From Macrostomum hystrix (taxonomy: Eukaryota > Animalia > Platyhelminthes): a DNA stretch of 64,000 nucleotides. Below, in pieces: positions 4,954-39,103 of the stretch (position 1 is the stretch's first letter; each line of letters starts with the position of its first letter). Both the position numbers and the translations under genes were made by a program. A model generated the notes under the pieces. The model was not told the DNA's origin. It saw only the letters and a program-made list of their open reading frames with translations, and did not search any database. The DNA lies in contig CATNEN010000038.1 of the NCBI GenBank assembly GCA_950097015.1, positions 22,630,001 to 22,694,000 on the forward strand. The letters run 5' to 3'.

Positions 4954-7900
4954 CTGATCACCGGAAGCAAGGAGCTAGGGAAATCCTTAATGTAAATCTT
5001 GATTTTAATAATGCTATATATGTAAATGCAATTGTAGCGTCTAAAAAAATACCTTGCCTAATAGACACAGGCTCTAGTGTCACAATCATTTCAGCTGATG
5101 TCCTTAATCAACCTAGACTAAATCTTATCAAGGCAGAAGTTCAGTTAACAGTTGCCAATGGCGAAGAATTAAAGGTTTTAGGAAAGAAAAAAGTTACCTT
5201 TTCATTTGGCCAACTCAATTTAGCACATGAAGTATATGTCTGTAGCAATATCCAGCACAATGTAATTATAGGTTTAGATTTCTTAAAGCAATTTGATGTT
5301 TCTATTCACCCAGCACAAGGTATTATTACTTTCAATGCTCATAACAAATCAATTCCAACTCGGAAAACCATGGAAGTCCCAAGGTTTCAAGTCCTTGTTG
5401 TGGCTGAAACTACAACTGTGCCACCAGGCCAGACTCTTGATATTTCTATTAAGCCAAAAATTCCTGATCAATCACTTGCTCCAGGCATTGTTGAATCAAA
5501 TCACCATGTCCCAGGTCTCTTGCTTGCCAGAGGTATTCATCTAATAAAAAATGAAGGCATGAATGTTAATGTTGTCAATAGTAATGTTAACAGAGAGTTA
5601 CTATTAAGAGCCGGTCTAGTCATTGCTAAGTTTATCCCACTAGATCAAAAAGGAAATGTGTGCATCATTGGAAGCTTAAATCCAAACCAAAGTGAAAATG
5701 AAGACATAATTAGTGAAGAGAGTAACCTAGACAATAAAACTAGTACACAGTCTAACCAAACAAAGTTTAACATATCAAAAGACTTGTCACCATCAGAAGC
5801 AAATGATGTAGAAGCAGTATTAAATCAATTTAAAGATGTATTCGCATCAGGTAGTAATTTAGGTAGAGCGAATTTGCTGAAACATAAAATCGATACAGGT
5901 GATGCGTTGCCGACCAAGGAAACACTAAGGAGATCTAACTTGACCACTATAAATGAACAGAAAAAGATTATCGATGACATGATCCAAGATAACGTCATTG
6001 TTCCATCATCATCTCCATGGGCAGCTGCAGTAGTGCTAGTTCGCAAGAAAGATGGTAACCTTAGATTTTGCATAGATTATCGAAAATTAAACAATGTTAC
6101 AAAGTCTGATGCCTATCCAATGCCTAGAGTGGACGACACTCTGGATGCTCTAGCTGGCAACATATATTTTTCAGCCATGGATATGCAGTCAGGATACTGG
6201 CAGGTCGAACTTGATGAACATGACAGTGAGAAGACAGCTTTCCTGTGCCACCATGGTCTGTACCAATTCAGGGTCATGCCATTTGGGCTGAAAAATGCCC
6301 CAGCTACGTTTCAACGGCTGATGGACCTGGTGCTGCGCGGTCTGAAGTGGGAAGCTTGTCTTGTGTATATCGATGACATCGTTGTAATGGGCAGAACATT
6401 AGACGAGCATAATTGTAATCTTGCTCAAGTCCTCCAGCGCCTCCAAAATGCAAATCTTCGCTTAAAGCCTAGCAAATGTATCTTTGCATCTAAGTCAATA
6501 AAAATTCTAGGACATAAAATAACACCCCAAGGCATTTCGGTTGATGATCAGAAGGTCAAAGCAGTCCATGATTGGCCTCGACCCCAATCAGTTAAGGATG
6601 TCCAGAGTTTCCTAGGTTTAGCCTCTTATTATAGAAGATTTATTAAAAGTTTCTCCACAATAGCAGAGCCTTTGCGCCGACTAACACTAAAAAATACACA
6701 ATTTATCTGGACTAATGAACAAGAACAAAGTTTCTGTTCGCTGAAAGACAGGTTAACTTCAGCGCCGATTCTTGCCTTGCCAGACACTTCAGATATTAAT
6801 AGTCAATTTATTTTAGATACTGATGCTAGCGGTTTCGGAGTAGGTAGTGTGCTGTCGCAGATTCAAAAAGGACAAGAGAAGGTTATCGCCTACAGCAGCC
6901 GAGCTTTGAATTCTGCAGAAAGAAATTACTGTGTGACTAGGAGGGAACTATTAGCTGTAGTCGAATCGTGCAAAAAATTCAGATCTTATCTAGCTGGTAA
7001 AAAGTTTATAATTCGCGTTGACCATGCTGCACTAACCCACTTACTAAGTTTCAAGGAGCCGACTGGACAGTTAGCACGCTGGCTTGAGTCATTACAAGAA
7101 TTTGACTTCGAAATTATCCACCGACCAGGTAAAATGCATATGAACGCTGACGCTCTGTCCAGATGTCCGCGGTTTTGTGAAGCATGTCAGCCGGACAAGC
7201 CGCGTAGAGTAGATGCTGAGTGTCAAACTAGTAACAATGAGACCTGTAATGCAGTTGTTCCATCACGTAGGAAGCAGCAACTTGTTGCGCGAACCTCGGA
7301 TGTCGAAGATATAAGTGACGAAGACTCAGTTGACACAGATATCGACGAAACATCTTTGAGAGTGTTGCAGCTAAGAGATGATGGTATTGGACCAGTTTAC
7401 AGAAAACTCGCTCAGGGAAATACGGAATTGACTGAGGAAGACAAGACAACTATGGCACCAGAGAGCATAATGTTAATGAATAAGGTTAATGGTCTATGCT
7501 TTATCAACGGCGTTATGCATCGTGTTATAGATTCAAAACCAATACTAGTGCTCCCAATAATTAAAAGACAAGAGATTATTGAAGAAATACATCAACTTGG
7601 TCATTTTGGCATAAAGAAGACTGCTGAAGCAGTTAAAGCACGATTTTATTGGCCAAAACTAATAGATGACGTCATGCTGTACACGAAAGAATGCGTCCAG
7701 TGCCAAAGAGCAAAACCAACATCCGCCTCTAAAGCTCCGCTCCGTCCTATGTCATCTGGCTTCCCGATGCAACGAGTGGCGATTGATGTCGTGAAAATAG
7801 CCACATCGCGCCAAGGCAACGACCGTCTACTTACAATTATGGATTACTTTAGCAAATGGGTCGAGCTTGTCCCGTTGCAGGACGAACGCGCAGAAACCAT

Positions 7901-8678
7901 CGCAAATGCACTTTTCATGCACTGGATAAGCCGGTTTGGAGCGCCCCACATCTTGCACTCTGATAGAGGCAAAGGCGTAGATGGCAAACTGATTAGGAAG
8001 CTCTGTAAACTACTTAACATCCAAAAGACACGCACAACAGCATTTCATCCTCAGTGTGATGGACTGGTGGAACGGTTCCACCGTACGCTTCATAATATCT
8101 TGCGTTGTTATCTTCAAAATGTTGATCCTGAGGACTGGGAGGATGCAATTCCCCATTGTCTCATGGCCTACCGAAGTTCAGTCCACGCGACTACCGGTTT
8201 CACACCGCACTATCTAATGACTGGTCGCGAGATGGTGCTGCCAGTAGACGTTGTGTACCGCGAGCCTGAGCCTAAATTAACTCCTACTACCTTTGCTGAC
8301 GCGATTAAAGAGCAACTAATTAACGCTTATGAGACAGTCAGGAAAGCCACCAAAGCTGTCCAAAGAGTTCAAAAGAGGTACTACGATAGAAATATCAAGA
8401 AGCAAAGATTCCATGAGAATGCATTGGTGTGGGTTTTTACCCCTCCTTTAGCTCTGCGACAGCGGGATTCTCGTTGGTCGCACAAGCACCATGCTCCATG
8501 GACTGGCCCATTCAGAGTAGTGCGTAAGACATCTCCAGTAAACTACGAAGTTGTCCGTCAGGTTGAAGGTAAAGATCAAGGTAAGGGGAAGATTGTCCAT
8601 GCGGGAAAGATGAAACTAATCGTCCAACCTTCGCAGAAGCTGCCGAGTCTCTGGCAAGATGATATCGAGGAAGAATAA
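4881..8678 (+). CDS. pol: Pol polyprotein (protease, RT, RNase H, integrase), in the -1 frame relative to gag
   Basis: LIDTGS protease; YIDD RT; DTDAS RNase H; HHCC, D,D(35)E and WTGPF integrase motifs; no stops over 1265 codons. Confidence 0.97.
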   Translation: MPKRQSGWITGQIPAKSANCPTTVADHRKQGAREILNVNLDFNNAIYVNAIVASKKIPCLIDTGSSVTIISADVLNQPRLNLIKAEVQLTVANGEELKVLGKKKVTFSFGQLNLAHEVYVCSNIQHNVIIGLDFLKQFDVSIHPAQGIITFNAHNKSIPTRKTMEVPRFQVLVVAETTTVPPGQTLDISIKPKIPDQSLAPGIVESNHHVPGLLLARGIHLIKNEGMNVNVVNSNVNRELLLRAGLVIAKFIPLDQKGNVCIIGSLNPNQSENEDIISEESNLDNKTSTQSNQTKFNISKDLSPSEANDVEAVLNQFKDVFASGSNLGRANLLKHKIDTGDALPTKETLRRSNLTTINEQKKIIDDMIQDNVIVPSSSPWAAAVVLVRKKDGNLRFCIDYRKLNNVTKSDAYPMPRVDDTLDALAGNIYFSAMDMQSGYWQVELDEHDSEKTAFLCHHGLYQFRVMPFGLKNAPATFQRLMDLVLRGLKWEACLVYIDDIVVMGRTLDEHNCNLAQVLQRLQNANLRLKPSKCIFASKSIKILGHKITPQGISVDDQKVKAVHDWPRPQSVKDVQSFLGLASYYRRFIKSFSTIAEPLRRLTLKNTQFIWTNEQEQSFCSLKDRLTSAPILALPDTSDINSQFILDTDASGFGVGSVLSQIQKGQEKVIAYSSRALNSAERNYCVTRRELLAVVESCKKFRSYLAGKKFIIRVDHAALTHLLSFKEPTGQLARWLESLQEFDFEIIHRPGKMHMNADALSRCPRFCEACQPDKPRRVDAECQTSNNETCNAVVPSRRKQQLVARTSDVEDISDEDSVDTDIDETSLRVLQLRDDGIGPVYRKLAQGNTELTEEDKTTMAPESIMLMNKVNGLCFINGVMHRVIDSKPILVLPIIKRQEIIEEIHQLGHFGIKKTAEAVKARFYWPKLIDDVMLYTKECVQCQRAKPTSASKAPLRPMSSGFPMQRVAIDVVKIATSRQGNDRLLTIMDYFSKWVELVPLQDERAETIANALFMHWISRFGAPHILHSDRGKGVDGKLIRKLCKLLNIQKTRTTAFHPQCDGLVERFHRTLHNILRCYLQNVDPEDWEDAIPHCLMAYRSSVHATTGFTPHYLMTGREMVLPVDVVYREPEPKLTPTTFADAIKEQLINAYETVRKATKAVQRVQKRYYDRNIKKQRFHENALVWVFTPPLALRQRDSRWSHKHHAPWTGPFRVVRKTSPVNYEVVRQVEGKDQGKGKIVHAGKMKLIVQPSQKLPSLWQDDIEEE
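4884..4943 (+). promoter_or_regulatory. -1 programmed ribosomal frameshift signal (C_CCA_AAC plus H-type pseudoknot)
   Basis: Heptamer 4884-4890 in gag phase; 8-nt spacer; stem 1 GGCTGGA 4899-4905 / TCCAGCC 4919-4925; stem 2 GGGGCAG 4910-4916 / CTGCCCC 4937-4943. Confidence 0.88.
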
Positions 8679-13140: not shown

Positions 13141-16100
13141 AGCCTTGGACTTGTGCAGAGAGTTATTAGAAATTGAAGAATATAAATTTCTAAATAAAAA
13201 CGTTTCTTTGGAAAAAAAATCCCTATCCGATAGACAAGAGGCGATCTTATTCAGAGATAAGAGTAGAGCATGGGCGTGTAATCATATCGATTGATTGACC
13301 CAAGGCAAACTCTCTCGGGCTTATTCAGTATTGTGAGGGGGGAGATTGCGTGCTGCAAGGGAAAATTGATCGCTGCCTGCTAGCGTCCTCTCGTGCCCGC
13401 AGCGAAGAAACAGACCAGTCCCCTATTCGCCCAGGCTAAGAATTCTGTGCGTCATCAACCTGCCAAGGCCAGGGCTTCAAGCGAAACCAGGGACTAACAA
13501 ACTATATTGATCAGCAGGCACTGCAGAAAGGGCACAGAATAAAAGTGCATGCATTCAATGCTTATTCATCTCAGTTGAGCAGTATTTGTCTGGTGAACTG
13601 CGCTGATTGGCAAAAAAGTACGACTCACACAAGCTTGGTATAATATGAGTGCTGCTTAAAGTACAAGCGAACTTCGATCATATTTTTAGTTTCTTCCGTC
13701 CTTGTTTTGGCTGTCCATCTGTTAACCTATAATCTAACCGTTACTCCATTTGCCGATGCACTGTATAGTTCCAGCACGTAATGCCCTAGTTCGGGCACGT
13801 GATACCGTTCTTGGGTGTCACACAGGTGATGCCCCACGGCCTGATTTCTCGCCAAGATCGCATAAATGAGGGCCTCTTTTTTCCATACTGCTGCACAGAA
13901 ATTATGTTGATCTCAAGTCGCAAATAAAATATTTTGAGTACATTACACTAACAATACGTCAGCATGTAGTGCAGTATACTATAGTGCATATACTTTAGAA
14001 CTGCCTGACCGACTGACACTGATACTGTACCGATTGTCACCGAAGTGAAAATGTTATTTTACGATGCGTTTTAAATAATTAGCTGGCCGACACTGTTATT
14101 TAAGTTGAAAAAACAGTGACACCTGCAGAGAGTTGCTTGCTGGTGCGGGTGGGCACGCACTCAGCCAGCCCCGATAAGACGGACGCAAGCTTACTCGCTG
14201 TCGTTAACAAAACAGTACAATACACCGCCCTTTAATCTTATCAGATGAAGCATGAACCATTGAGGCGCCTGCGCAGGCTGCAGCTGAGTTTCAGTCGCGA
14301 GCTCTGAAAACAGCCTGGTTTGTTATTGCCAGAGAGGCATGGAAAATTCCAACGAGTGCGGGAGTGCGGGCCGTGCATTTTCCTTCTAAATTCTCTCTCC
14401 TCCTTATCGCACTTTGTCCTGCCCTGCCCCAGCCACCCCATCCTCGCGCTTAAATTCTCTACCCTGTCTCTCTCTTGGAGTGGAATTTTCCATCGCCCTA
14501 TATTTCTAATTTTTTTTCTATTAGAACATCGTCCTACTAGGACCTACTAATTATTTTGTAAATTATTACAACATTTTGTATGTTGTAAACTAAACTGGCT
14601 GATCGGAAAAGTGGCAAGGAAAGCCTAAGTGGCGGATTCGAAAAGTGGCACTGACAGCCGAAGGCGCAGATCAGATGCAGGTCAATAAAAATAATTTAAT
14701 ATTTTATTATCGATATCGTAATATCGTATATGCCCAAAATTTAGTGCCACTTTGTTTATAGTAACTTTGAAATAATTTTTCCTTGGCTTTGCAACTTTAT
14801 AATATTATAAAATGGATACAATTAAGTTACTTGGAAGGGCGCCCGTCCTCGGTGAGAGGTAAAAGGGTTTAGGTGGAACTGGTTTAAACCAGACAATATT
14901 TTAATAAGTTCTTCCCTAGTCAAGTTTCCTTCTCTCTCTCCTCTTTGCTCGGTTGGAGGAGACGGAACGGCTGAACTCCCGAAGCTTTGAGCAGTTGGCT
15001 ACGACGCTTTGGGGATATTATTCCCACATGAATTGGGAATAGGGGCATTATAAGTGCATGTACACTGCCTAAATAGGCATATTGCAATTAGCGTATGAGT
15101 GCAAGAAGAGGAAAAAAGAAGCGATGACTACTCCCCAGGGGGCATAGTCAGTGAATTAGGATTATTGTGCATGCATAATTCGTGACGCAGTTCCCGAATG
15201 GGAATACCATCGCGAAGTCCATGTGCATTTTACTGATACATGTTTGTGCTTAGGGATGGAAATTTGAAGCATGGCGATTTTAATTAGGAAATTGGCTTGG
15301 GAAATAAAAATGGGAATTTTTTTTTGCTTTTGGGACAAAATTAAAGTGCGCACTTTATGGATAGTATGAATGACAGCATAGGGCAGAGGGAAGCCAGATT
15401 TTCTGTAGAAGCTTAGGGTGAAGGCAGAGGTTGGAGGGGAGAATGGAGGTGAGAATAGGATAGAAGGAAGTAGGATGATATGATGTAGAAGTCAGCAAGG
15501 GTGTAAAAAACAAATAAATTGATTGAAAGTCAAAGCAACAAAGTTTATGATGTAACCAATGACGCATTGTAAAAACATACAAGTAAGTACTTTTGTGACG
15601 CATTTTACACATTCCTGTTGTGTGCCTTTCGTTTGTATTTTAAAATTAAACGGAACAAAAATGTTTAACAAAAATACGACTTTAATCTCTAGGTTAATAA
15701 AGGATTGTTAAATCGTTGTTCAATTGCTCGTAAAATAGGTCTAAGGAAAAATGAACCGCAAATATACGTCAACGAAAAATCCCGAAGCAGATATAAATAT
15801 TGCCACAACAATCAGAAAGAGTCCCGACTTCTCTGGGAAAAGTTTTTTTTACAAAAACTAAAAAATGTGAATGATGCCACCTTTTAGTTTAAACGTCAAT
15901 AAAAAAGTAAAAATCGTAAAACGTTTAGAAAGCAAGAAAAAAACTGGCTTGAAAATGATTTCTTTGAAAAAATATAGAAACTACGAAATAAAAACTTACC
16001 TCACCTACACATTCGTTGCTTTTAATTGAAAATTCATACAAGCTAAAATTCAGTGTCGATTTTTTAGCTTTCCTCAGTACACACTTGACTGTCAAGATTA

Positions 16101-16638
16101 CCTTTCAGATTAAATTCATACAACGTACTGCAGGTTATGTTTCAAAAAGCGGCTAGTACTGGTTATGCAATGCAACTGAATGTTATCAACACACTTTATA
16201 ATCTTGACAATCATGTGACACCCAGATTTAAAATAAGTTGACCAGAACATTTCCTAAAAATAAAGTTTTGCGGATTCGTAATCAAACCACAATTTGTTAA
16301 TATGAAGATAAATTTAATAGACGGCATTAAAGCAAGAATAAGCGCAAAGTATTAAAGCGATTTTATATTAAAAATTAACTTAGATCTTAGATTATACCTC
16401 TTTGTGAATGACGCATATGAGTTATTTAAAGTTAATTAATAAAACGAACGAACGAACAATTAATAGGTCAGATACGAATTTAAATAACGGCAACAACATC
16501 AACGCTAACAAAGGAAAAAAACGAACAAAAAACACAAGAAAAACTGACCAAACATGGCGAATTTTTCCCTAAAACTTTCCTTCACTTCTCATGGGTTGGA
16601 TCAATTCTGTTAGCCACACTGCTAGCCGGGCTCAACTC

Positions 16639-18345
16639 TCAGTCGGAGATGGTGTAGGCCATGTAAGCGAAGCCGTCTGCGTCTAGACCAATCATGCCGC
16701 CACCGTTGGCAGTTCGCGGCTCGAAGCAGGCGAAGCCAAGAAAAGGCAGAGTTTTCATTAGCGTGTCTGAAATTTGAGTGAGTGGATTACCAGTAGAAAT
16801 ACCAAGCGGGGGGATTGCCCCCTGACAATTTTTGTGCTGCACCCGAACGGAGCAACGCAAGCACACGAAACTCAAGAACACGGGCCAAATTTTTGTTGCG
16901 CATCTTCTGAAACAATTAAGTCGCCAGCCCTTTAGATCGTCGAGATACTCAATGGTTCTGGCCGAAGGTCGGATTTTTCCCATAAGCGCGCTAGTGCATT
17001 TCATACACCCCTACACGAATTAGCACTGCGCCTCTGTGCGGCCTTGCCAGGCCTTCAAAGTGTATCAGCACGTCACCCGAATGTGCCTGCATCATCTCCG
17101 TCTTCGGTGGTCACCTACCTTTATCTAGACGGACTGCTGGACCTTCAATGGGTAAAACTGGTGGAACTAGACCACTATGGACACCTGACGCGAATCAACC
17201 ACAGGACACCATCGCCTAGTCTGTAAACTAATCAGTCACCACCCAACGCTGTTACCATCCAGGCGCTGCCAAAAAAATTCAGGGGGAGAGAAATTCCCCT
17301 TGGTATAAAAAAGGCGGCAAAATTGTTTGGTAGTCCTACGGTTGAAGAATAAATAAGGACTTGAGTTTGATAATTATACATCAACAGAAGATCAATAAAT
17401 AATTAAAGCCGGACCGTTCGATGGCTAATCAACGATGTACAGCTACTGATCATAAACCAATCAGAGAATGCTATAGTGACAATGACCAAACAAAGACCGA
17501 AGATTGACCAATAAAAAACTGACAGATTCATATTTTATGCTCAGTGCTCACCCTTGTCCTGTCTTTGCCTGCTAACGCCCAGCAGCACTCGTCGGCAGTG
17601 CAATTCCTCCTCGGCAAACTCTAGCATGTCGGTGAGGTCACGCTTGAGGCGCTCACCAACCTGTTCCGTCTCGCCAAGGTGTAACACCATGGCGCGGCCG
17701 GCACCGTCTGGATGATCGCCAACAAGCGTGTAGGGAAGAGGCTGCGGCTGGCTGGTGTCAAGCTCAGTCGCCGAATCCGCGTCAAACTCTTCTCTGTTGT
17801 TGTTATCCTCGTAGCAGAAGTCGCCAACATCGTCATAGCCGAGGTTGTCGTCGCCGATGACAAAGCGAGCCGACTTTTTCTCTTTATCCTTGGTCTTGTC
17901 CACTTGTAGCTGCTGCTGCTGCTGCTGGCGGTGGTGGCTCTCTGATCTTCTGGCAGCAAACGACTGTCCGCTAACATGGGTGACAGGGGGCTTTTGTGAT
18001 TCCCCCAGGCCGCTGCCCTCTGTCAACAACTCTGCGCTGTCAACTAAGGCGGCCCGGGGAGCATCAAAAACGCCACCCAGGCCCGGCAGGCGGTCGCGAG
18101 CAGAAGTTGTCTAACTCCGTGCTCCTATAAAAAGAAATAGATATTTTGATTGTTATTAGTACAGAAAGCCACCAATAGCTGATTGCTGCTAAACGGTTAA
18201 CTATTACATTTTTTACATTTAAAATCATGTCAATGATGATTTCAGACCCAAAGGCCCGATGAATCAAAATGAAATAAAACGAAATCATACAAAAAGCTAA
18301 ATTATTTAGATATTTATGTACTTACCGGAAGGAAAGCTTCGCCAT
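16639..18345 (-). CDS. OAZ: Ornithine decarboxylase antizyme; exons 18345-18326, 18124-17552, 16766-16639; +1 frameshift at 18069-18064
   Basis: ORF1 MAKLSFRSTELDNFCSRPPAGPGWRF-stop (GGG CCT GGG TGG CGT TTT TGA T). The +1 frame continues DAPR...KRDLTDMLEFAEEELHC...LMKTLPFLGF...YMAYTISD, the antizyme domain. GT-AG sites are in phase. Confidence 0.96.
17981..18069 (-). promoter_or_regulatory. Antizyme +1 frameshift site UUU-UGA and 3' stimulatory pseudoknot
   Basis: Stem 1 UCCCCGGGCCGC (18060-18049) / GCGGCCUGGGGG (18013-18002); stem 2 UGACAGAGGGC (18025-18015) / GCCCCCUGUCA (17991-17981), 10 of 11 pairs. Confidence 0.85.
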
Positions 18346-18458
18346 GTTTGGTTCCCGTAGGGGCTACAATGCGACTGCCTTGTGGTTGGCCGGTTTCGCA
18401 AAAAATTGCGTACCCAAAGGGTATACAAATATTATGACGAGATTATGCAGTTTGTTTC

Positions 18459-18470
18459 GCTTATATATAC
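18459..18470 (-). promoter_or_regulatory. Putative TATA box of antizyme, in the region shared head-to-head with AP2A
   Basis: GTATATATAAGC about 115-125 nt upstream of the ATG, with a TCAT initiator-like site ~30 nt downstream. Confidence 0.5.
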
Positions 18471-19182
18471 ACAAGCTACAAAAAGTAAAACAAAAAAGGA
18501 AATAGTTTTTTACATTTACTTACAGATTCTCTCAATTAATATAATAACTTAGTCATTAAGCATAATATTTTCTGCTTCTGACGCGATTTTACTTTTTGGC
18601 TGATTAAGTGAACTCAAACTTGAAGTTTTGAGCGGTTTCCTACAAATAAGTTTCAGTGTTTACTTTAATTTAAGATCGAGTTAAAAAACTCTTGGACGCA
18701 TTAGCTGTATTAATTTTATCTCATACAGATATTTCAGATGGTTGTGCTTTTTTCAGATTTACTAAGAATATGCATCAACTTGTTCTTATGTAGCCATTTC
18801 TGCAGGCAGTTATTTATTTTTCGTCTATTGTGTCTAGTCAAAATGTCATTATTTTGTCTAGGTGGATAATACTTTCCTCTATTTCTACTATTCCAAATAT
18901 TTGAGATATAAAGGCCTAGATATTATAATTTTTATACCATGCTGACATAGATTGCTGCAGTGCACCCTTTACCTGTTATCAAAAAATTCTGTTACATCAC
19001 TAGCAATTGATCAAAACTTTTGGGCTAAGCCTACCTACTATGCTCATATGACTAAAGTACTCAATTAAAAAGAAAATGGGTTATATTGCAGTTTGTTTTG
19101 CATAATTATTTTTCATTTTGTATTGGTGCCATTGCATCACATAGAGCATTAATTTGATCCAAATAGTCATGCCACATCTGTC

Positions 19183-19636
19183 AGTCCCAGGTCATTTCGG
19201 TGACAAGATATTTTGGTGACAGAATTGGTCAGTTCGGTGACAACTATCTTTGCACCTAAATATGTTGAGAAAACAGCCTTCCACGATCCAGCAGCTGCAC
19301 TTGCCTTGTCAATCCAAAACTTGAAAAATTATTATTATACACATTTAATTAGGAACAAATAACTATTGAAACTATTGACTAGGCCTACTCATTAAATAAT
19401 TTAATAATTTAACTCATTAAAAGTAAAACCCAGACTTAATCAGAGTGATGCAGCTTCTTATTAATACTTATAGCATTATTTAATTAATACTTTATAAGTG
19501 TGCATAGTTAAAATGGAAGGCTGTTTTTAGCATATTTATTAGGTGCAAAAATAGTTGTCACCAATCTGACTAATTGTGTCACTGAAATGACTTGAGTTGT
19601 CACCGAAATGTCTTGTCCCCAAAATGACCTTGTCCC
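19183..19636. mobile_element. MITE with ~100-bp TIRs
   Basis: GGTCATTTCGGTGACAAG...AAAACAGCCTTCCA inverted at TGGAAGGCTGTTTT...CCAAAATGACC; 8-bp TSD CATCTGTC (19175-19182, 19637-19644). Confidence 0.82.
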
Positions 19637-21225
19637 CATCTGTCTATGGCATAGAGTGTGAGTTTGAGCCAACTATAGCCTAGTCATGCCAAAGCCATAT
19701 TTTTACATTTGAAAAAAACAAAATATATTCAACATAGACAAACAAAAAAGTAATGACAGGCATTCTAGTCAGTTGTTGCATTAGTTATTGAATTTTGAAC
19801 ATTCACAAAAGATTATAGTGGGCTATTGAGAACATAATGGCACTGAGGGGTAGAGCCACCACCAACAATACACTTTATAATGAGTCTTGTACAGTTATGA
19901 GTCAGATATGCCTTGCATGTTTTGAAATTTCTGCTTTGCATGGGCTCAATTCAAACTCTAGGGTTTCAGCCATAAACAGATGATTTAGCATGAATTAGGC
20001 CTCCCCTAGATCAAATTCAGACTCTGCATGATTTTGAGAATCATTCAAACTTAAAAAAATATGGTGTGTGGTTGTTTCATCTGAAGCCTTTTTGTCTGCC
20101 ATGGTATTTTGGTAGACAAAACAACCATTTTTTCATAGTATTATTCACATGATGCAAAACAAACAGTAATATTGCTAGAATATTTTGTTATATGCTTTAG
20201 TTTTAGTACTTGCTAGTTTGTTGTTTCTTTTCAGTTCTTTAACAAAACACATGATTGTAGAAGCAAAAAAGCAAGTTAATCTTTTTTATTACTATTTGGT
20301 CAAGACAAAAGTTTATTTCAGGTCCATGCAGATATACTATATAGGTAATATAACTACTTTCTATATTAGAGGTGATGTAATAATAATCAATTTACAGGTG
20401 ATTTTGGTCAAGCAAAACTATTATGTTAACTTAATTGCTAATGCATGTGATTTATCAGCCACCAAACATATATATTGAGAGTTCAAGAAAAAGTTTATAC
20501 TTGTGCATATCCTAATGGCACATGCCAATAACACAATTGTACATATCTAGGCTATTTTTAGTTTTGGTTGCTAGCATGCTAGCTAATGTGCTAATTTTTT
20601 TTTCAGTTTACCCAAACCACTAGCTATAGCTAGGCCTGGAATAATTTGTCAACAAGAAAGATACATAAAATAATAATGATAGACTCCATCGAGCCAAGTT
20701 ACATTTAACCTTTCTCTACTAAAAGATGCATGAACTAGCCATTTTTTTTCTTTTAGTCAAGAAGTACCTAAAATTATGATAACTTGCTCTTATATCACAG
20801 CAAGACTTAGAATTTCTAGAGATTAGTGGTTTCAAGCTTGCGAATGTTGTTTTTATATTGGGGAAATGTGTGTATTACCATAAAAATGGTGCACTCATAT
20901 TTATCCAAATGTTTTAGCTTTTTTCAAACATAATTATGCCCATTCTCAATACTGTTCTAACTTAGCTCCAATATCTATTGTCATTTAAGTAAGCTTGACT
21001 GTCTTTAATTACTATAAACTTAGTTTACTTTGTATTAAAATATCAGAAACTTAAGGATATCATTGTTCATATTAAGAAATATTTCTTTTTGTTCAACATC
21101 AAAAAAGCTTTCCAATTCATATTTTTAATGGCAAGTTTATAAAAAACTGTCACTTTCTCTTTAAATTGGTATCTTTTTCAGCCATTTTTATTATAAAAAC
21201 TTTCTAATTATAAAGCATCACAGAC

Positions 21226-30200: not shown

Positions 30201-33200
30201 GGGTGGCGGTGGAACATAGACTAAACTAAGAACTACAATCAATAAAGAAATGAACTTTTAAACAGTAGTATAATGTGTACAAATAATTAAGGAGAATTCC
30301 AACAAATAGAAAATACTAGATATTGACAAATATATATATATATAAGATATTTAGTATATAGATTGTATAAAACTAAAGTGTGTCCTCAATTCCTCATATA
30401 TTCAAATATCAGAGCAAAATCGGAGCAACCAAATTTCCGCAGATTGCAAAATTCCTCTTGATTTTCCACAGGCGAGCCAGAAATTCCGCATTGCGGAATT
30501 TCCGCAGGTAGTGGGAACACTGACCTGTTGCTATGCAGCTAGCTAGGAACTGGTTGCTATGCAGCTAGTTAGGGACCGGTTGCTATGCAGCTAGTTAGGG
30601 ACCGGTTGCTATGCAGCTAGTTAGGGACCGGTTGCTATGCAGCTAGCTAGGAACCGGTTGCTATGCAGCTAGTTAGGGACCGGTTGCTATGCAGCTAGTT
30701 AGGGACCGGTTGCTATGAAGCTAGTTATGGACCTGTTGCTATGCAGCTAGCTAGGAACTGGTTCCTATGCAGCTAGTTAGGGACCGGTTGCTATGCAGCT
30801 AGCTAGGAACCGGTTGCTATGCAGCTAGTTAGGGACCGGTTGCTATGAAGCTAGTTAGGGACCGGTTGCTATGCAGCTCGTTAGGGACCGGTTGCTATGC
30901 AGCTAGTTAGAGACCGGTTGCTATGACGCTTCCGTAATGATCTCCACATATATTATGATGATGAGCGTTTCGTCAACCATATCCAGGCTTACGCAGCCAA
31001 GACTGTCTTCGAAGCCCTGGAGGCACCAGCCTGCCACGAGAACATGGTGAAAGTTGGCGGCTACATTCTAGGCGAATTCGGCAACCTGATCGCCGGCGAT
31101 GCTCGCAGCTCGCCGTCCATTCAATTTCAATTGCTGCACGGCAAGTTCCACCTGTGCAGTCCGCCAACTCGAGCCCTGCTGCTTAGCGCCTACATTAAAC
31201 TGGTCAACCTGTTCCCGGAGATTCGCCCGGACATTATCGCCGTACTGGAGTCCGATGCTAATCTGCGCAATTCCAATGTGGAGATTCAGCAGCGAGCTAG
31301 CGAGTATCTGAGTCTGGCCAGAATTGCCAGCCAGGTTGGCCTCAGTAACTTCTTTTATTCAGGGGATAAAAGGGGATAGCAACTAAACTTTACCTAGGGT
31401 TAGAGAGGGTAGCAACCGAAGTTACCTGGGGGTTATAGAGGGTAGCAACCAAACTTACCTGGAGGTTAGAGAGCGTAGCAACCGAAGTTACCTAGGCTTT
31501 TGAGAGGGTAGCAACCGAAGTTACCTAGGCTTTTGAGAGGGTAGCAACCGAAGTTACCTAGGCTTTTGAGAGGGTAGCAACCGAAGTTACCTAGGCTTTT
31601 GAGAGGGTAGCAACCGAAGTTACCTAGGCTTTTGAGAGGGTAGCAACCGAAGTTACCTAGGCTTTTGAGAGGGTAGCAACCGAAGTTACCTATGGGTTAG
31701 AGAGGGTAGAAACCGAAGACTTTAGTAATATACCAACCAGACAATGTTCAACCCATCCTCATCAATCAGGACGTCCTGGCCACGGTGCTTGAGGAGATGC
31801 CGCCGTTTCCTGAGCGCGAGAGTTCGATTCTGGCCCAGCTGCGCAAGAAGAAGCCGGCCGTTGAGGACGCCCTGAGAGCTCGTGGCGAGAAGCAACAGCA
31901 GCAGCGTCCTGGCTCCAGTGCCGATAATGATGGAGCAGCTTCCGTCGCCAAAGGTGAATGATTTATTAACCTTTTAAAATACATCTGAAGAGTAAAAAAA
32001 GTAATTTCCGAACTTTTTTGCAGCTCCTACGACAGGAAAAGCCGAAGCGCCAGCTTTGAAACTGCAGGGCGAAGTGGCCGGAGCTGAGAGCAACACGGAC
32101 TCTGGCGACCTACTGGGCCTCGACTTTGGCGGCGCTGGCTCCGCTACCGCTACATCAGATGGCGGAGGCGCCGCCAATGTCGACCTGTTGGCTTCCATTC
32201 TCGACGTTGGTGTGTCCAGCTCGACGACTGCGGCATCGACGGCGCCGGCTCGCCAGACTGTGGTTGTTAGTCCAGGCGTTGGCGGCAGTCAGGGCCCAAT
32301 CCAGGGCGAAGAGAATTGGTTCAAGTTTGTATGCAAAAACTCCGGCGTGCTGCACGAGAACGACATTCTGCAGGTGCGGTGCTGGGAATAGCGGGTCTAG
32401 GATTCTTAGAACAGTGCACGGATATCTGCGATTCTTGGGAAATGAATGAAAATGGCACGCCCCTAAAATTCATTTAAATTATTATTTCTGAGTTTGTTGG
32501 AAAAAAAGCACATCTTTTCACGATATTTCGATACTAGCTACGATACTAGCTCTGCCATTCTTCTAAGATCTCTAGACTAGGATTCTTAGAATAATGGCAG
32601 ATCTCTAGGCTGTGATTCTTAGAATAATGGCAGATCTCTATACTGTGATTCTTAGAAGAATGGTAGATCTTTAGACTAGGATTCTTAGATGAATGGCAGA
32701 TCACTAGACTGTGGTTCTTCGAAGAATGGCAGATCACTGGACTGTGATTCTTAGAAGAATGGCAGATCTCTAGACTGTGATTCTTAGAAGAATGGCAGAT
32801 CACTAGACTGTGGTTCTTAGAAGAATGGCAGATCTCTAGACTGTGAATCTTAGAAGAATGGCAGATCTCTAGACTGTGGTTCTTAGAAGAATGGCAGATC
32901 ACTAGACTCTGGTTCTTAGAAGAATGGCAGATCTCTAGACTGTGGATCTTAGAAGAATGGCAGATCTCTAGACTGTGATTCTTAGAAGAATGGCAGATCA
33001 CTAGACTGTGATTCTTAGAAGAATGGCAGATCTCTAGACTGTGATTCTTAGAAGAATGGCAGATCTCTAGACTTTGGTTCTTAGAAGAATGGCAGATCAC
33101 TAGACTGTGGTTCTTAGAAGAATGGCAGATCTCTAGACTGTGGTTCTTAGAAGAATGGCAGATCTCTAGACTGTGATTCTTAGAAAATGTCAGATTTCGT

Positions 33201-38486: not shown

Positions 38487-39103
38487 GGTAACCGGTCGTT
38501 TCGGCCATAGCCGTTTCGGCCCCAAACCGTTTCGGCCACAAACCAGTTCGGCCCCAAACATGTACGCAAAAGCCCACATTTGCGTACATGCATATATGTC
38601 ATGCCACCTCTCAGCCCCATGGAAAATTATTTTGCTGTATATCTAATTGTAAAATTAAGCAGTTATTTTATGCGCGACGGATAGCTAAATGCACAGGCAT
38701 TGAATTGTTGATTCTCATCGAATGACGAAAGATAACTTACAGACGTACAGCCCTTTAGGCTTCAACTCATTTTAAGGACTGCTTAAATGTACTGAAAATT
38801 ACGGACAGAACTCTTTATGCTCCATTGACTACTTCAGTAGTCCATGTAGCATTATTATGCTCATACCCCTGTGTTGTAAATATTGTATAAGTTGAATTCG
38901 TGCCGTAGCGTCGTTGTTTAGAAAGTTAACAAAACTGAAAAAGTTGTGCCAAAAGAAGTTCCTTGACAAACAAACAATACAATAAAGCCGCTTAATAAGT
39001 ATGTGGGCCGAAACGGCTTTTGGCCGAAACGGCTATGGCCGAAACGGCTTTTGGCCGAAACGGCTATGGCCGAAACTGCGTATGGCCGAAACGACCGCAA
39101 TTC
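38487..39103. mobile_element. MITE with GTTTCGGCC subterminal repeats
   Basis: Inverted ends CGGTCGTTTCGGCCATA; tandem GGCCGAAACGG motifs; 8-bp TSD CATAAAAC (38479-38486, 39104-39111). Confidence 0.83.

What the first reader, a model, noticed from the sequence alone, without database searches (positions are those of the whole stretch)
16547..18352. Antizyme 3' UTR carries a bipartite antisense copy of its own start-codon region (candidate long-range translational switch)
Seen: the mRNA 5' region ACCAAACAUGGCGAA-GCUUUCCUUC (genomic 18352-18328, all in exon 1, containing the ORF1 AUG) is complementary to a 3' UTR segment 55-92 nt after the stop: GAAGGAAAGU (16583-16574), a 12-nt bulge, then UUCGCCAUGUUUGGU (16561-16547). 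That gives 15 perfect pairs plus 10 contiguous pairs (one G-U) covering the AUG. Established: antizyme output is tightly controlled at translation by polyamine-induced +1 frameshifting, and polyamines stabilise RNA duplexes. Inference: 5'-3' pairing could occlude initiation or circularise the mRNA, adding a second control layer. I do not know this element from described antizyme mRNAs. Caveat: AACATGGCG alone is a common YY1-like motif, but it does not explain the colinear 15+10 match.
Basis: partly seen in the sequence, partly recalled or inferred. Interest (0 to 1): 0.85.

Follow-up and report, generated by a model that had tools for sequence, protein, structure and literature searches.

The report
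Antizyme mRNA start pairs with its tail
In a flatworm antizyme gene, 25 bases around the start codon are mirrored in antisense in the 3' untranslated tail of the same mature mRNA, and they should fold into a helix over the start codon, but no related species could be checked, so whether it is an evolved control element is open.

Summary
mRNA 18352-18338 (around AUG 18345-18343) is perfectly complementary to 16561-16547. The next 10 nt (18337-18328) pair with 16583-16574 (one G-U) across a 12-nt bulge.

The gene is a three-exon Macrostomum-type flatworm antizyme with a UUU-UGA +1 shift site. Spliced RNA contigs confirm both introns and run unbroken from at least 18419 to 16344 or beyond, so both arms are in the mature mRNA. 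The refuter "polyadenylation before 16583" fails.

The 15-mer occurs only twice in the 220-Mb genome, both times here. The 3' UTR arm region is single-copy. Folding the spliced mRNA puts the whole helix in the minimum-energy structure (pair probabilities about 0.93-0.95 in three 3'-end variants). Scrambling the 3' arm costs 10.8 kcal/mol and leaves the AUG open.

Chance is unlikely for this gene: 0 of 3000 shuffles reach 15 nt, and a second helix has P about 0.003. It is not negligible across a whole scan, and a neutral inverted micro-duplication cannot be excluded.

The genome's second antizyme gene shows no equivalent.

Verdict: a real, testable candidate, with function unproven. The scan had noted an antizyme gene elsewhere in this genome, but not this pairing.

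The parts
18461..18469 (-). TATA-like box upstream of the transcript start
   Evidence: TATATATAA read directly. RNA contigs reach 18419 and the depth bin 18449-18535 is empty, so the start lies between about 18419 and 18448.
18325..18419 (-). Exon 1 (minimum extent): 5' UTR of at least 74 nt with no upstream AUG, then the first 20 coding nt of ORF1
   Evidence: The X13 contig has 95 nt and the X1 contig 84 nt on the exon-1 side of the joint 18123/18325. Sequence.
18343..18345 (-). ORF1 start codon (context AAACAUGG)
   Evidence: First AUG of the transcript. It is in frame with the UUU-UGA site after splicing.
18328..18352 (-). 5' arm: 25 nt, from 7 nt before the AUG to 3 nt before the exon-1 donor
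18124..18324 (-). Intron 1 (201 nt)
   Evidence: Joint 18123/18325 in contigs of X1, X2 and X13.
17552..18123 (-). Exon 2: end of ORF1, the frameshift site and most of ORF2
   Evidence: Contigs. The translation of 18065-17553 is open and matches Pfam ODC_AZ at E = 2.2e-6.
18063..18069 (-). +1 frameshift site UUU-UGA-U (ORF1 stop at 18066-18064)
   Evidence: Direct reading. The same site is reported for Macrostomum lignano in PMC1874602.
16767..17551 (-). Intron 2 (785 nt)
   Evidence: Joint 16766/17552 in all four runs.
16799..17328 (.). High-copy MITE-like repeat inside intron 2 (not part of the pairing element)
   Evidence: Imperfect terminal inverted repeats (pairs I4, I5, I14). At least 1798 candidate copies in the genome, 80-91% identical. 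Many diverged RNA contigs lie on it.
16639..16766 (-). Exon 3 coding part, with the ORF2 stop at 16641-16639
16344..16638 (-). 3' UTR, minimum extent. Longer contigs continue past 16100, to about 16079 in X2 and about 15553 in X13.
   Evidence: Contig pieces. No joint lies inside the UTR.
16574..16583 (-). 3' arm, part A (10 nt; pairs with 18337-18328; one G-U)
   Evidence: (I9).
16562..16573 (-). 12-nt bulge between the two 3' arm parts. It partly allows an alternative register.
   Evidence: (I1).
16547..16561 (-). 3' arm, part B (15 nt; perfect complement of 18352-18338, including the AUG)

Best explanation
The two arms are real, unique and both present in the mature antizyme mRNA. On thermodynamic grounds they form a bipartite 25-bp intramolecular helix (15 bp, a 12-nt bulge, then 10 bp). 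This helix joins the 5' end to the start of the 3' UTR and buries the ORF1 AUG, which is otherwise unstructured. The most likely consequence is a moderate cis-damping of 43S scanning and AUG recognition on molecules in the closed form, together with physical 5'-3' closure of the mRNA. The most economical origin is a small inverted copy of the exon-1 start region that arose in the 3' UTR of this gene lineage after the split from the second antizyme gene. Shown: the sequence, its uniqueness, its inclusion in the transcript, and the predicted fold. Inferred: formation in vivo, the effect on initiation, and the origin. Not shown at all: selection for it, or polyamine responsiveness.
For: Exact complementarity at the stated coordinates. 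The only two copies of the 15-mer in 220 Mb are these. The 3' UTR arm region is single-copy and not a transposon. Spliced contigs from three studies carry both arms on one molecule: the X1 contig of 1079 nt spans 18408 to 16344 with both introns removed. The minimum-energy structure of the spliced mRNA contains the full helix, with pair probabilities of about 0.99 and 0.92. Probabilities are 0.93-0.95 in three 5'/3'-end variants up to 1892 nt. Scrambling the 3' arm raises the MFE by 10.8 kcal/mol and leaves the AUG region with only 3-4 bp mini-hairpins. In an unbiased scan of 3 kb upstream against the 3' UTR, the arms are the top outlier at z = -5.5.
Against: There is no cross-species evidence. 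The genome's second antizyme gene has no comparable helix, although its exon 1 could not be located. The net stabilisation of about -11 kcal/mol, and a duplex starting about 70 nt from the cap, are in a range that scanning ribosomes can often unwind (established knowledge from reporter hairpin studies, not tested here). The energy statistic alone gives p of about 3e-4 to 1e-3 per gene, so several genes per genome would reach it by chance. One other chance-like perfect 15-nt inverted pair within 3 kb exists in this same window. Folding programs ignore ribosomes, proteins and kinetics.
Confidence: 0.45

Rival explanations
1. Neutral by-product. The 3' UTR copy arose by chance, or by a small inverted duplication or template switch. 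It is recent and lineage-specific, and it has no consequence that selection sees. Translation and RNA-binding proteins keep the arms apart in vivo.
For: No equivalent in the second antizyme gene. No homology beyond the arms, and the 12-nt bulge looks like a slipped partial repeat of the second half. Another unrelated perfect 15-nt inverted pair lies within 3 kb in this window. The scan covers whole genomes, so rare coincidences are expected to surface (p estimates). Strains in the RNA runs differ from the window at too few UTR sites to show constraint.
Against: The joint chance of the 15-bp anchor (fewer than 1 in 3000) and the collinear 10-bp helix (0.003) is about 1e-6 per gene, or roughly 0.02 per genome of 20,000 genes. 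The placement is exact: over the AUG and in the first 100 nt of the UTR. A -36 kcal/mol duplex over the start codon of a dosage-sensitive regulator is unlikely to be wholly without effect.
Confidence: 0.38
2. An evolved polyamine-responsive long-range switch. Polyamine-dependent stabilisation or melting of the 5'-3' helix gates ORF1 initiation, as a second sensor layer on top of frameshifting.
For: The same structural evidence as the best explanation. Antizyme is a translationally controlled polyamine sensor, and 3' UTR roles are described as understudied (PMC1874602).
Against: No conservation data. Absent from the second antizyme gene. The simplest version is anti-homeostatic, because more polyamine would give a tighter helix and less antizyme. 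No protein or ligand element was identified, and Rfam finds nothing.
Confidence: 0.12
3. A DNA-level feature. The same protein-binding motif (YY1/Pho-like, AACATGGCG) or an antisense promoter sits at both places, and the RNA complementarity is incidental.
For: The 11-mer AACATGGCGAA occurs 348 times against 66 for its reversed control.
Against: Many of the listed 11-mer copies fall in tight clusters (repeat arrays). The 15-mer is unique to these two sites, and its 1-mismatch variants (9) are below the control (24). A 9-nt motif does not explain the 15+10 collinear match. There is no TATA or promoter-like context on the + strand upstream of 16547 (direct reading), and only a 19-codon ORF follows.
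Confidence: 0.05

Closest known systems
icaR mRNA of Staphylococcus aureus: the 3' UTR pairs with the ribosome-binding region of the same mRNA (PMC3868564)
   Same: A 3' UTR motif is antisense to the translation-initiation region of its own mRNA. [quoted passage not shown]
   Different: icaR is bacterial and pairs with the Shine-Dalgarno sequence rather than a scanned AUG. It uses a short UCCCCUG motif, and it has been proven by mutation, toeprinting and RNase III assays. Nothing here has been tested experimentally.
Orthoflavivirus genome cyclisation (5' UAR/DAR/CS with 3' UAR/DAR/CS; PMC12168079 seen; details from my own knowledge)
   Same: A multipartite, collinear long-range pairing between the region around the start codon and the 3' UTR, with unpaired spacers between the helices.
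   Different: It occurs in viral genomic RNA and serves replication and conformational switching. It is conserved, with covariation, across a genus. Here the RNA is a cellular mRNA from one species, and conservation is unknown.
Human p53 mRNA 5'-3' UTR duplex bound by RPL26 (my own knowledge: Chen and Kastan 2010; one search confirmed only that RPL26 binds the 5' UTR and raises translation)
   Same: A eukaryotic cellular mRNA whose 5' and 3' UTRs pair, with an effect on translation.
   Different: In p53 the duplex stimulates translation through a protein and lies in the UTRs proper. Here the helix covers the AUG and the first six codons, and no protein partner is known.
Known antizyme mRNA cis-elements: shift site, 5' stimulator, 3' pseudoknots, conserved vertebrate 3' UTR blocks (PMC1874602)
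   Same: The same gene family. The UUU-UGA site matches Macrostomum lignano. The review notes that 3' UTR conservation exists and is unexplained.
   Different: All described elements act locally on frameshifting or polyadenylation. None pairs the start codon with the 3' UTR.

Membership tests
Ornithine decarboxylase antizyme gene decoded by +1 frameshifting | ODC_AZ domain in ORF2 | tested here: met
   Pfam PF02100 at E = 2.2e-6, 28 bits against a cutoff of 24.2. 71% identity to the Macrostomum lignano antizyme.
Ornithine decarboxylase antizyme gene decoded by +1 frameshifting | A short ORF1 ending in a stop codon, overlapped by ORF2 in the +1 frame, at a recognised shift site | tested here: met
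   The spliced ORF1 ends at UUU-UGA (18069-18064) and ORF2 is open from 18065. UUU-UGA is listed for M. lignano (PMC1874602).
Ornithine decarboxylase antizyme gene decoded by +1 frameshifting | Expressed and spliced as modelled | tested here: met
   Both joints appear in RNA-derived contigs of several runs.
Regulatory 5'-3' intramolecular mRNA pairing (icaR-type, p53-type, flaviviral cyclisation-type) | Complementarity between the initiation region and the 3' UTR beyond chance | tested here: met
Regulatory 5'-3' intramolecular mRNA pairing (icaR-type, p53-type, flaviviral cyclisation-type) | Both partners present on the same mature RNA | tested here: met
   One 1079-nt spliced contig spans 18408 to 16344.
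Regulatory 5'-3' intramolecular mRNA pairing (icaR-type, p53-type, flaviviral cyclisation-type) | Pairing conserved, ideally with covariation, in related species or in paralogous gene copies | tested here: inconclusive
   The second antizyme gene on C29 shows no equivalent, but its exon 1 was not found.
Regulatory 5'-3' intramolecular mRNA pairing (icaR-type, p53-type, flaviviral cyclisation-type) | Duplex forms in vivo and changes translation or stability, with rescue by compensatory mutation | not testable with these tools
   Only in-silico folding was possible.
Transposon terminal inverted repeats or a repeat family | Arms belong to a multi-copy element | tested here: not met
   The 15-mer occurs only twice in the genome, and 16480-16640 is single-copy. 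The only repeat in the gene is the intron-2 MITE-like element.
Rfam RNA families | Match to a curated covariance model | tested here: not met
   No hit at E <= 1 in 14000-21000.

The most novel reading that the evidence does not exclude
The helix is a selected, conserved regulatory device of macrostomid antizyme mRNAs. It would be a long-range 5'-3' switch that gates ORF1 initiation or mRNA closure in response to polyamines or another signal, giving antizyme a second translational control layer besides +1 frameshifting.
Probability: 0.12. Interest if true: 0.8.

Novelty: new member of a known kind. Interest (0 to 1): 0.42.

Why it matters
Antizyme is the textbook case of a metabolite-sensing translational recoding event, yet the surveys I read (PMC1874602, PMC5009743) give its 3' UTR no assigned function. 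Proven start-codon-to-3'-UTR duplexes in cellular eukaryotic mRNAs are very few. If this one is conserved and active, it would add an initiation-level control to a classic frameshift circuit. It would also do so in an animal model that I recall can be made transgenic (not checked here), which makes it directly testable. If it is a neutral inverted micro-duplication, it shows that perfect 15+10 self-complementarity over a start codon can arise and be tolerated. That is a useful caution for scans that flag such pairs.

Tried and rejected
- **JGI metagenome scans.** One scan used a protein alignment and one used a 21-nt conserved frameshift-site pattern. Both were empty.
- **Supplement of PMC1874602.** It is not held.
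- **Protein searches.** They gave only M. lignano plus two short flatworm-like fragments, and no DNA.
- **RNA runs.** Organisms A, B and C and the sediment and wastewater metatranscriptomes are all 99% or more identical to the window. They give no comparative signal. No variant lies in either arm, but the divergence is too low to interpret.
- **Second antizyme gene (C29).** Its exon 1 could not be identified by similarity or by an ATG-plus-donor search. I therefore scanned candidate-free. The best perfect complements of its 3' UTR in 11 kb upstream are 13 nt (AT-only, 3.9 kb upstream) and 11 nt, about what chance gives. There is also no clean duplex outlier.
- **Rfam.** Nothing.
- **Rejected: transposon inverted repeats.**
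- **Rejected: a larger inverted duplication.** No flanking homology.
- **Rejected: circular RNA.** No back-joints between exons.
- **Rejected: antisense gene start.** Only a 19-codon ORF follows, with no promoter-like context.
- **Joined sequences.** No database search was made with a joined (spliced) mRNA or protein. Exons were searched apart, by reference. The spliced mRNA was assembled only inside local scripts, from window coordinates, for folding.

Full report
**Observation**

- The 15 nt at 18352-18338 contain the first AUG of the transcript (18345-18343).
- They are the perfect reverse complement of 16561-16547.
- The next 10 nt (18337-18328) pair with 16583-16574, with one G-U, across a 12-nt bulge on the 3' side (16573-16562).

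The repeat finder finds both arms independently. It also finds an alternative ungapped register of 22 nt with two mismatches.

**What the gene is**

ORF1 starts in exon 1, continues after a 201-nt intron, and ends at UUU-UGA (18069-18064). The +1 frame is open from 18065. It matches Pfam ODC_AZ, and its C-terminus lies on a third exon.

The nearest protein is the Macrostomum lignano antizyme, at 68-71% identity. Ivanov and Atkins list UUU-UGA as the M. lignano shift site (PMC1874602). That is probably the second copy I found on contig C29. It does not mention the 5'-3' pairing.

**Is the 3' arm in the transcript?**

Yes. I laid Logan contigs of four runs on 16100-18700.
- They give the joints 18123/18325 and 16766/17552, with canonical GT..AG ends on the minus strand.
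- A single 1079-nt spliced contig (X1) runs from 18408 to 16344.
- X13 reaches 18419 at the 5' end.
- The contigs of X2 and X13 continue past 16100, to about 16079 and about 15553.
- There is no joint inside the UTR.

Contigs cannot show true ends, however, so a minor short isoform is not excluded. The 5' UTR is at least 74 nt, has no upstream AUG, and sits below a TATA-like box at 18469-18461.

**Is it more than chance?**

- The 15-mer occurs exactly twice in the 220-Mb genome, both times here. One-mismatch variants (9) are below the control count of 24.
- The 161 nt around the 3' arm are single-copy, so this is not a transposon.
- Of 3000 dinucleotide shuffles of a 1086-nt UTR, none gives a 15-nt Watson-Crick run against exon 1, and two give 14.
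- Duplex energy is -41.8 kcal/mol against -24.9 +/- 2.85, but one shuffle of 1500 reached -41.2.
- Given the anchor, a second collinear helix of 10 bp or more appears in 0.3% of flank shuffles, under liberal gap rules.

The joint probability is therefore about 1e-6 per gene, or roughly 0.02 per genome. That is convincing for this gene but not overwhelming for a scan of many genomes. One other chance-like perfect 15-nt inverted pair within 3 kb (5435/8386) sits in this same window.

These nulls do not cover a mutational origin, that is, a small inverted duplication. The alignment of the 5' sense strand with the 3' UTR antisense strand shows no homology beyond the arms. The bulge looks like a slipped partial repeat of the second half.

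**Fold**

I assembled the spliced mRNA only inside local scripts, from window coordinates, and made no database search with the joined sequence.
- The minimum-energy structure of the 1101-nt mRNA contains every one of the 25 pairs. Pair probabilities are about 0.99 for the 15-bp helix and 0.92 for the 10-bp helix, and the isolated duplex is -36.1 kcal/mol.
- The helix persists at 0.93-0.95 in three isoform models of up to 1892 nt.
- Scrambling the 3' arm costs 10.8 kcal/mol and leaves the AUG region essentially open.
- In a candidate-free scan of 3 kb upstream against the UTR, the arms are the top outlier at z = -5.5.

**Comparative evidence**

This is the weak point.
- Two metagenome scans were empty.
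- The paper's supplement is not held.
- All RNA runs are the same species, at 99% identity or more.

The only relative available is the second antizyme gene on C29.
- It shares the UUU-UGA site and an 83%-identical 133-nt block spanning that site.
- I could not find its exon 1.
- Within 11 kb upstream, the best perfect complements of its 3' UTR are 13 nt (AT-only, 3.9 kb upstream) and 11 nt, about what chance gives.
- It shows no clean duplex outlier.

The element is therefore not an ancient feature of both flatworm antizyme genes. Whether orthologues keep it is unknown.

**Mechanism**

Shown: the two arms are unique, complementary and on one mature molecule.

Inferred: they pair. The closed form would hide an otherwise unstructured, well-contexted AUG (AAACAUGG) about 75 nt from the cap, and it would tie the mRNA ends together.

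From established reporter work (my knowledge, not tested here), a helix of this strength at this distance from the cap is expected to damp scanning moderately rather than block it.

Polyamine-stabilised occlusion would reduce antizyme synthesis when polyamines are high. It fits homeostasis only if the helix is stimulatory, through closure or recycling, or if it is opened by another factor.

**Comparison with known systems**

The nearest analogues are:
- icaR 3' UTR to Shine-Dalgarno pairing in S. aureus (PMC3868564);
- flaviviral multipartite cyclisation (PMC12168079);
- the p53 5'-3' UTR duplex (my knowledge; one search gives only the RPL26 binding to the 5' UTR).

The two antizyme and recoding reviews I read describe no start-codon-to-3'-UTR pairing. 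They note that 3' UTR roles are neglected. Rfam has no match.

**Verdict**

The functional claim is unproven.

| Reading | Estimate |
|---|---|
| The helix forms and measurably affects the mRNA | about 45% |
| Of that, it is a selected switch | about 12% |
| Neutral coincidence or micro-duplication | about 38% |
| DNA-level motif | about 5% |

Interest is moderate. It is a clean, cheap-to-test hypothesis in a classic regulatory gene, but it rests on one species.

Noticed in passing
window 16799-17328 (intron 2 of the antizyme gene): A roughly 530-nt MITE-like element with imperfect terminal inverted repeats. The genome search gave at least 1798 first-look candidates, with scored copies 80-91% identical. 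Many diverged copies appear in RNA contigs.
   Followed up: partly
window 18102-17970 against L002 (G000:C29:3456019-3459213, minus strand): The two antizyme genes of this genome are 83% identical over 133 nt spanning the UUU-UGA site and running about 95 nt past it, including three identical runs of 23-25 nt. Their proteins are otherwise only about 65-69% identical. This fits a conserved frameshift-stimulating RNA structure (a pseudoknot was noted by the earlier scan entry s1-368599).
   Followed up: partly
window 16344, about 16079 and about 15553: RNA contigs from different runs end at three different depths in the 3' UTR. AAUAUAAA lies about 20 nt upstream of 16344. Alternative polyadenylation is possible, as in vertebrate antizyme 1, but contigs cannot prove ends.
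   Followed up: no
G000:C29:3457519-3457925 (L002, L004): A second antizyme gene whose first exon could not be located. A weak candidate, ATGTACAG followed by GTTGTT about 300 nt upstream of exon 2, would give the right phase and the same Arg codon across the splice. It is unverified.
   Followed up: partly
window 5435-5449 and 8386-8400: Another perfect 15-nt inverted pair 2.9 kb apart, with no obvious repeat context. It is useful as an empirical reminder of the background rate.
   Followed up: no
window 32548-33165 and 38493-39097: Tandem arrays (33-nt period and about 30-nt period) with an inverted flanking copy, which generate many inverted-repeat pairs. They are probably satellite-carrying mobile elements. 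The scan notes a minisatellite-carrying Helitron 13 kb before this window.
   Followed up: no
genome-wide (G000): The 11-mer AACATGGCGAA occurs 348 times against 66 for its reversed control. Many of the listed copies lie in tight clusters on C1, C2 and C3, which suggests a tandemly repeated family that carries it.
   Followed up: no
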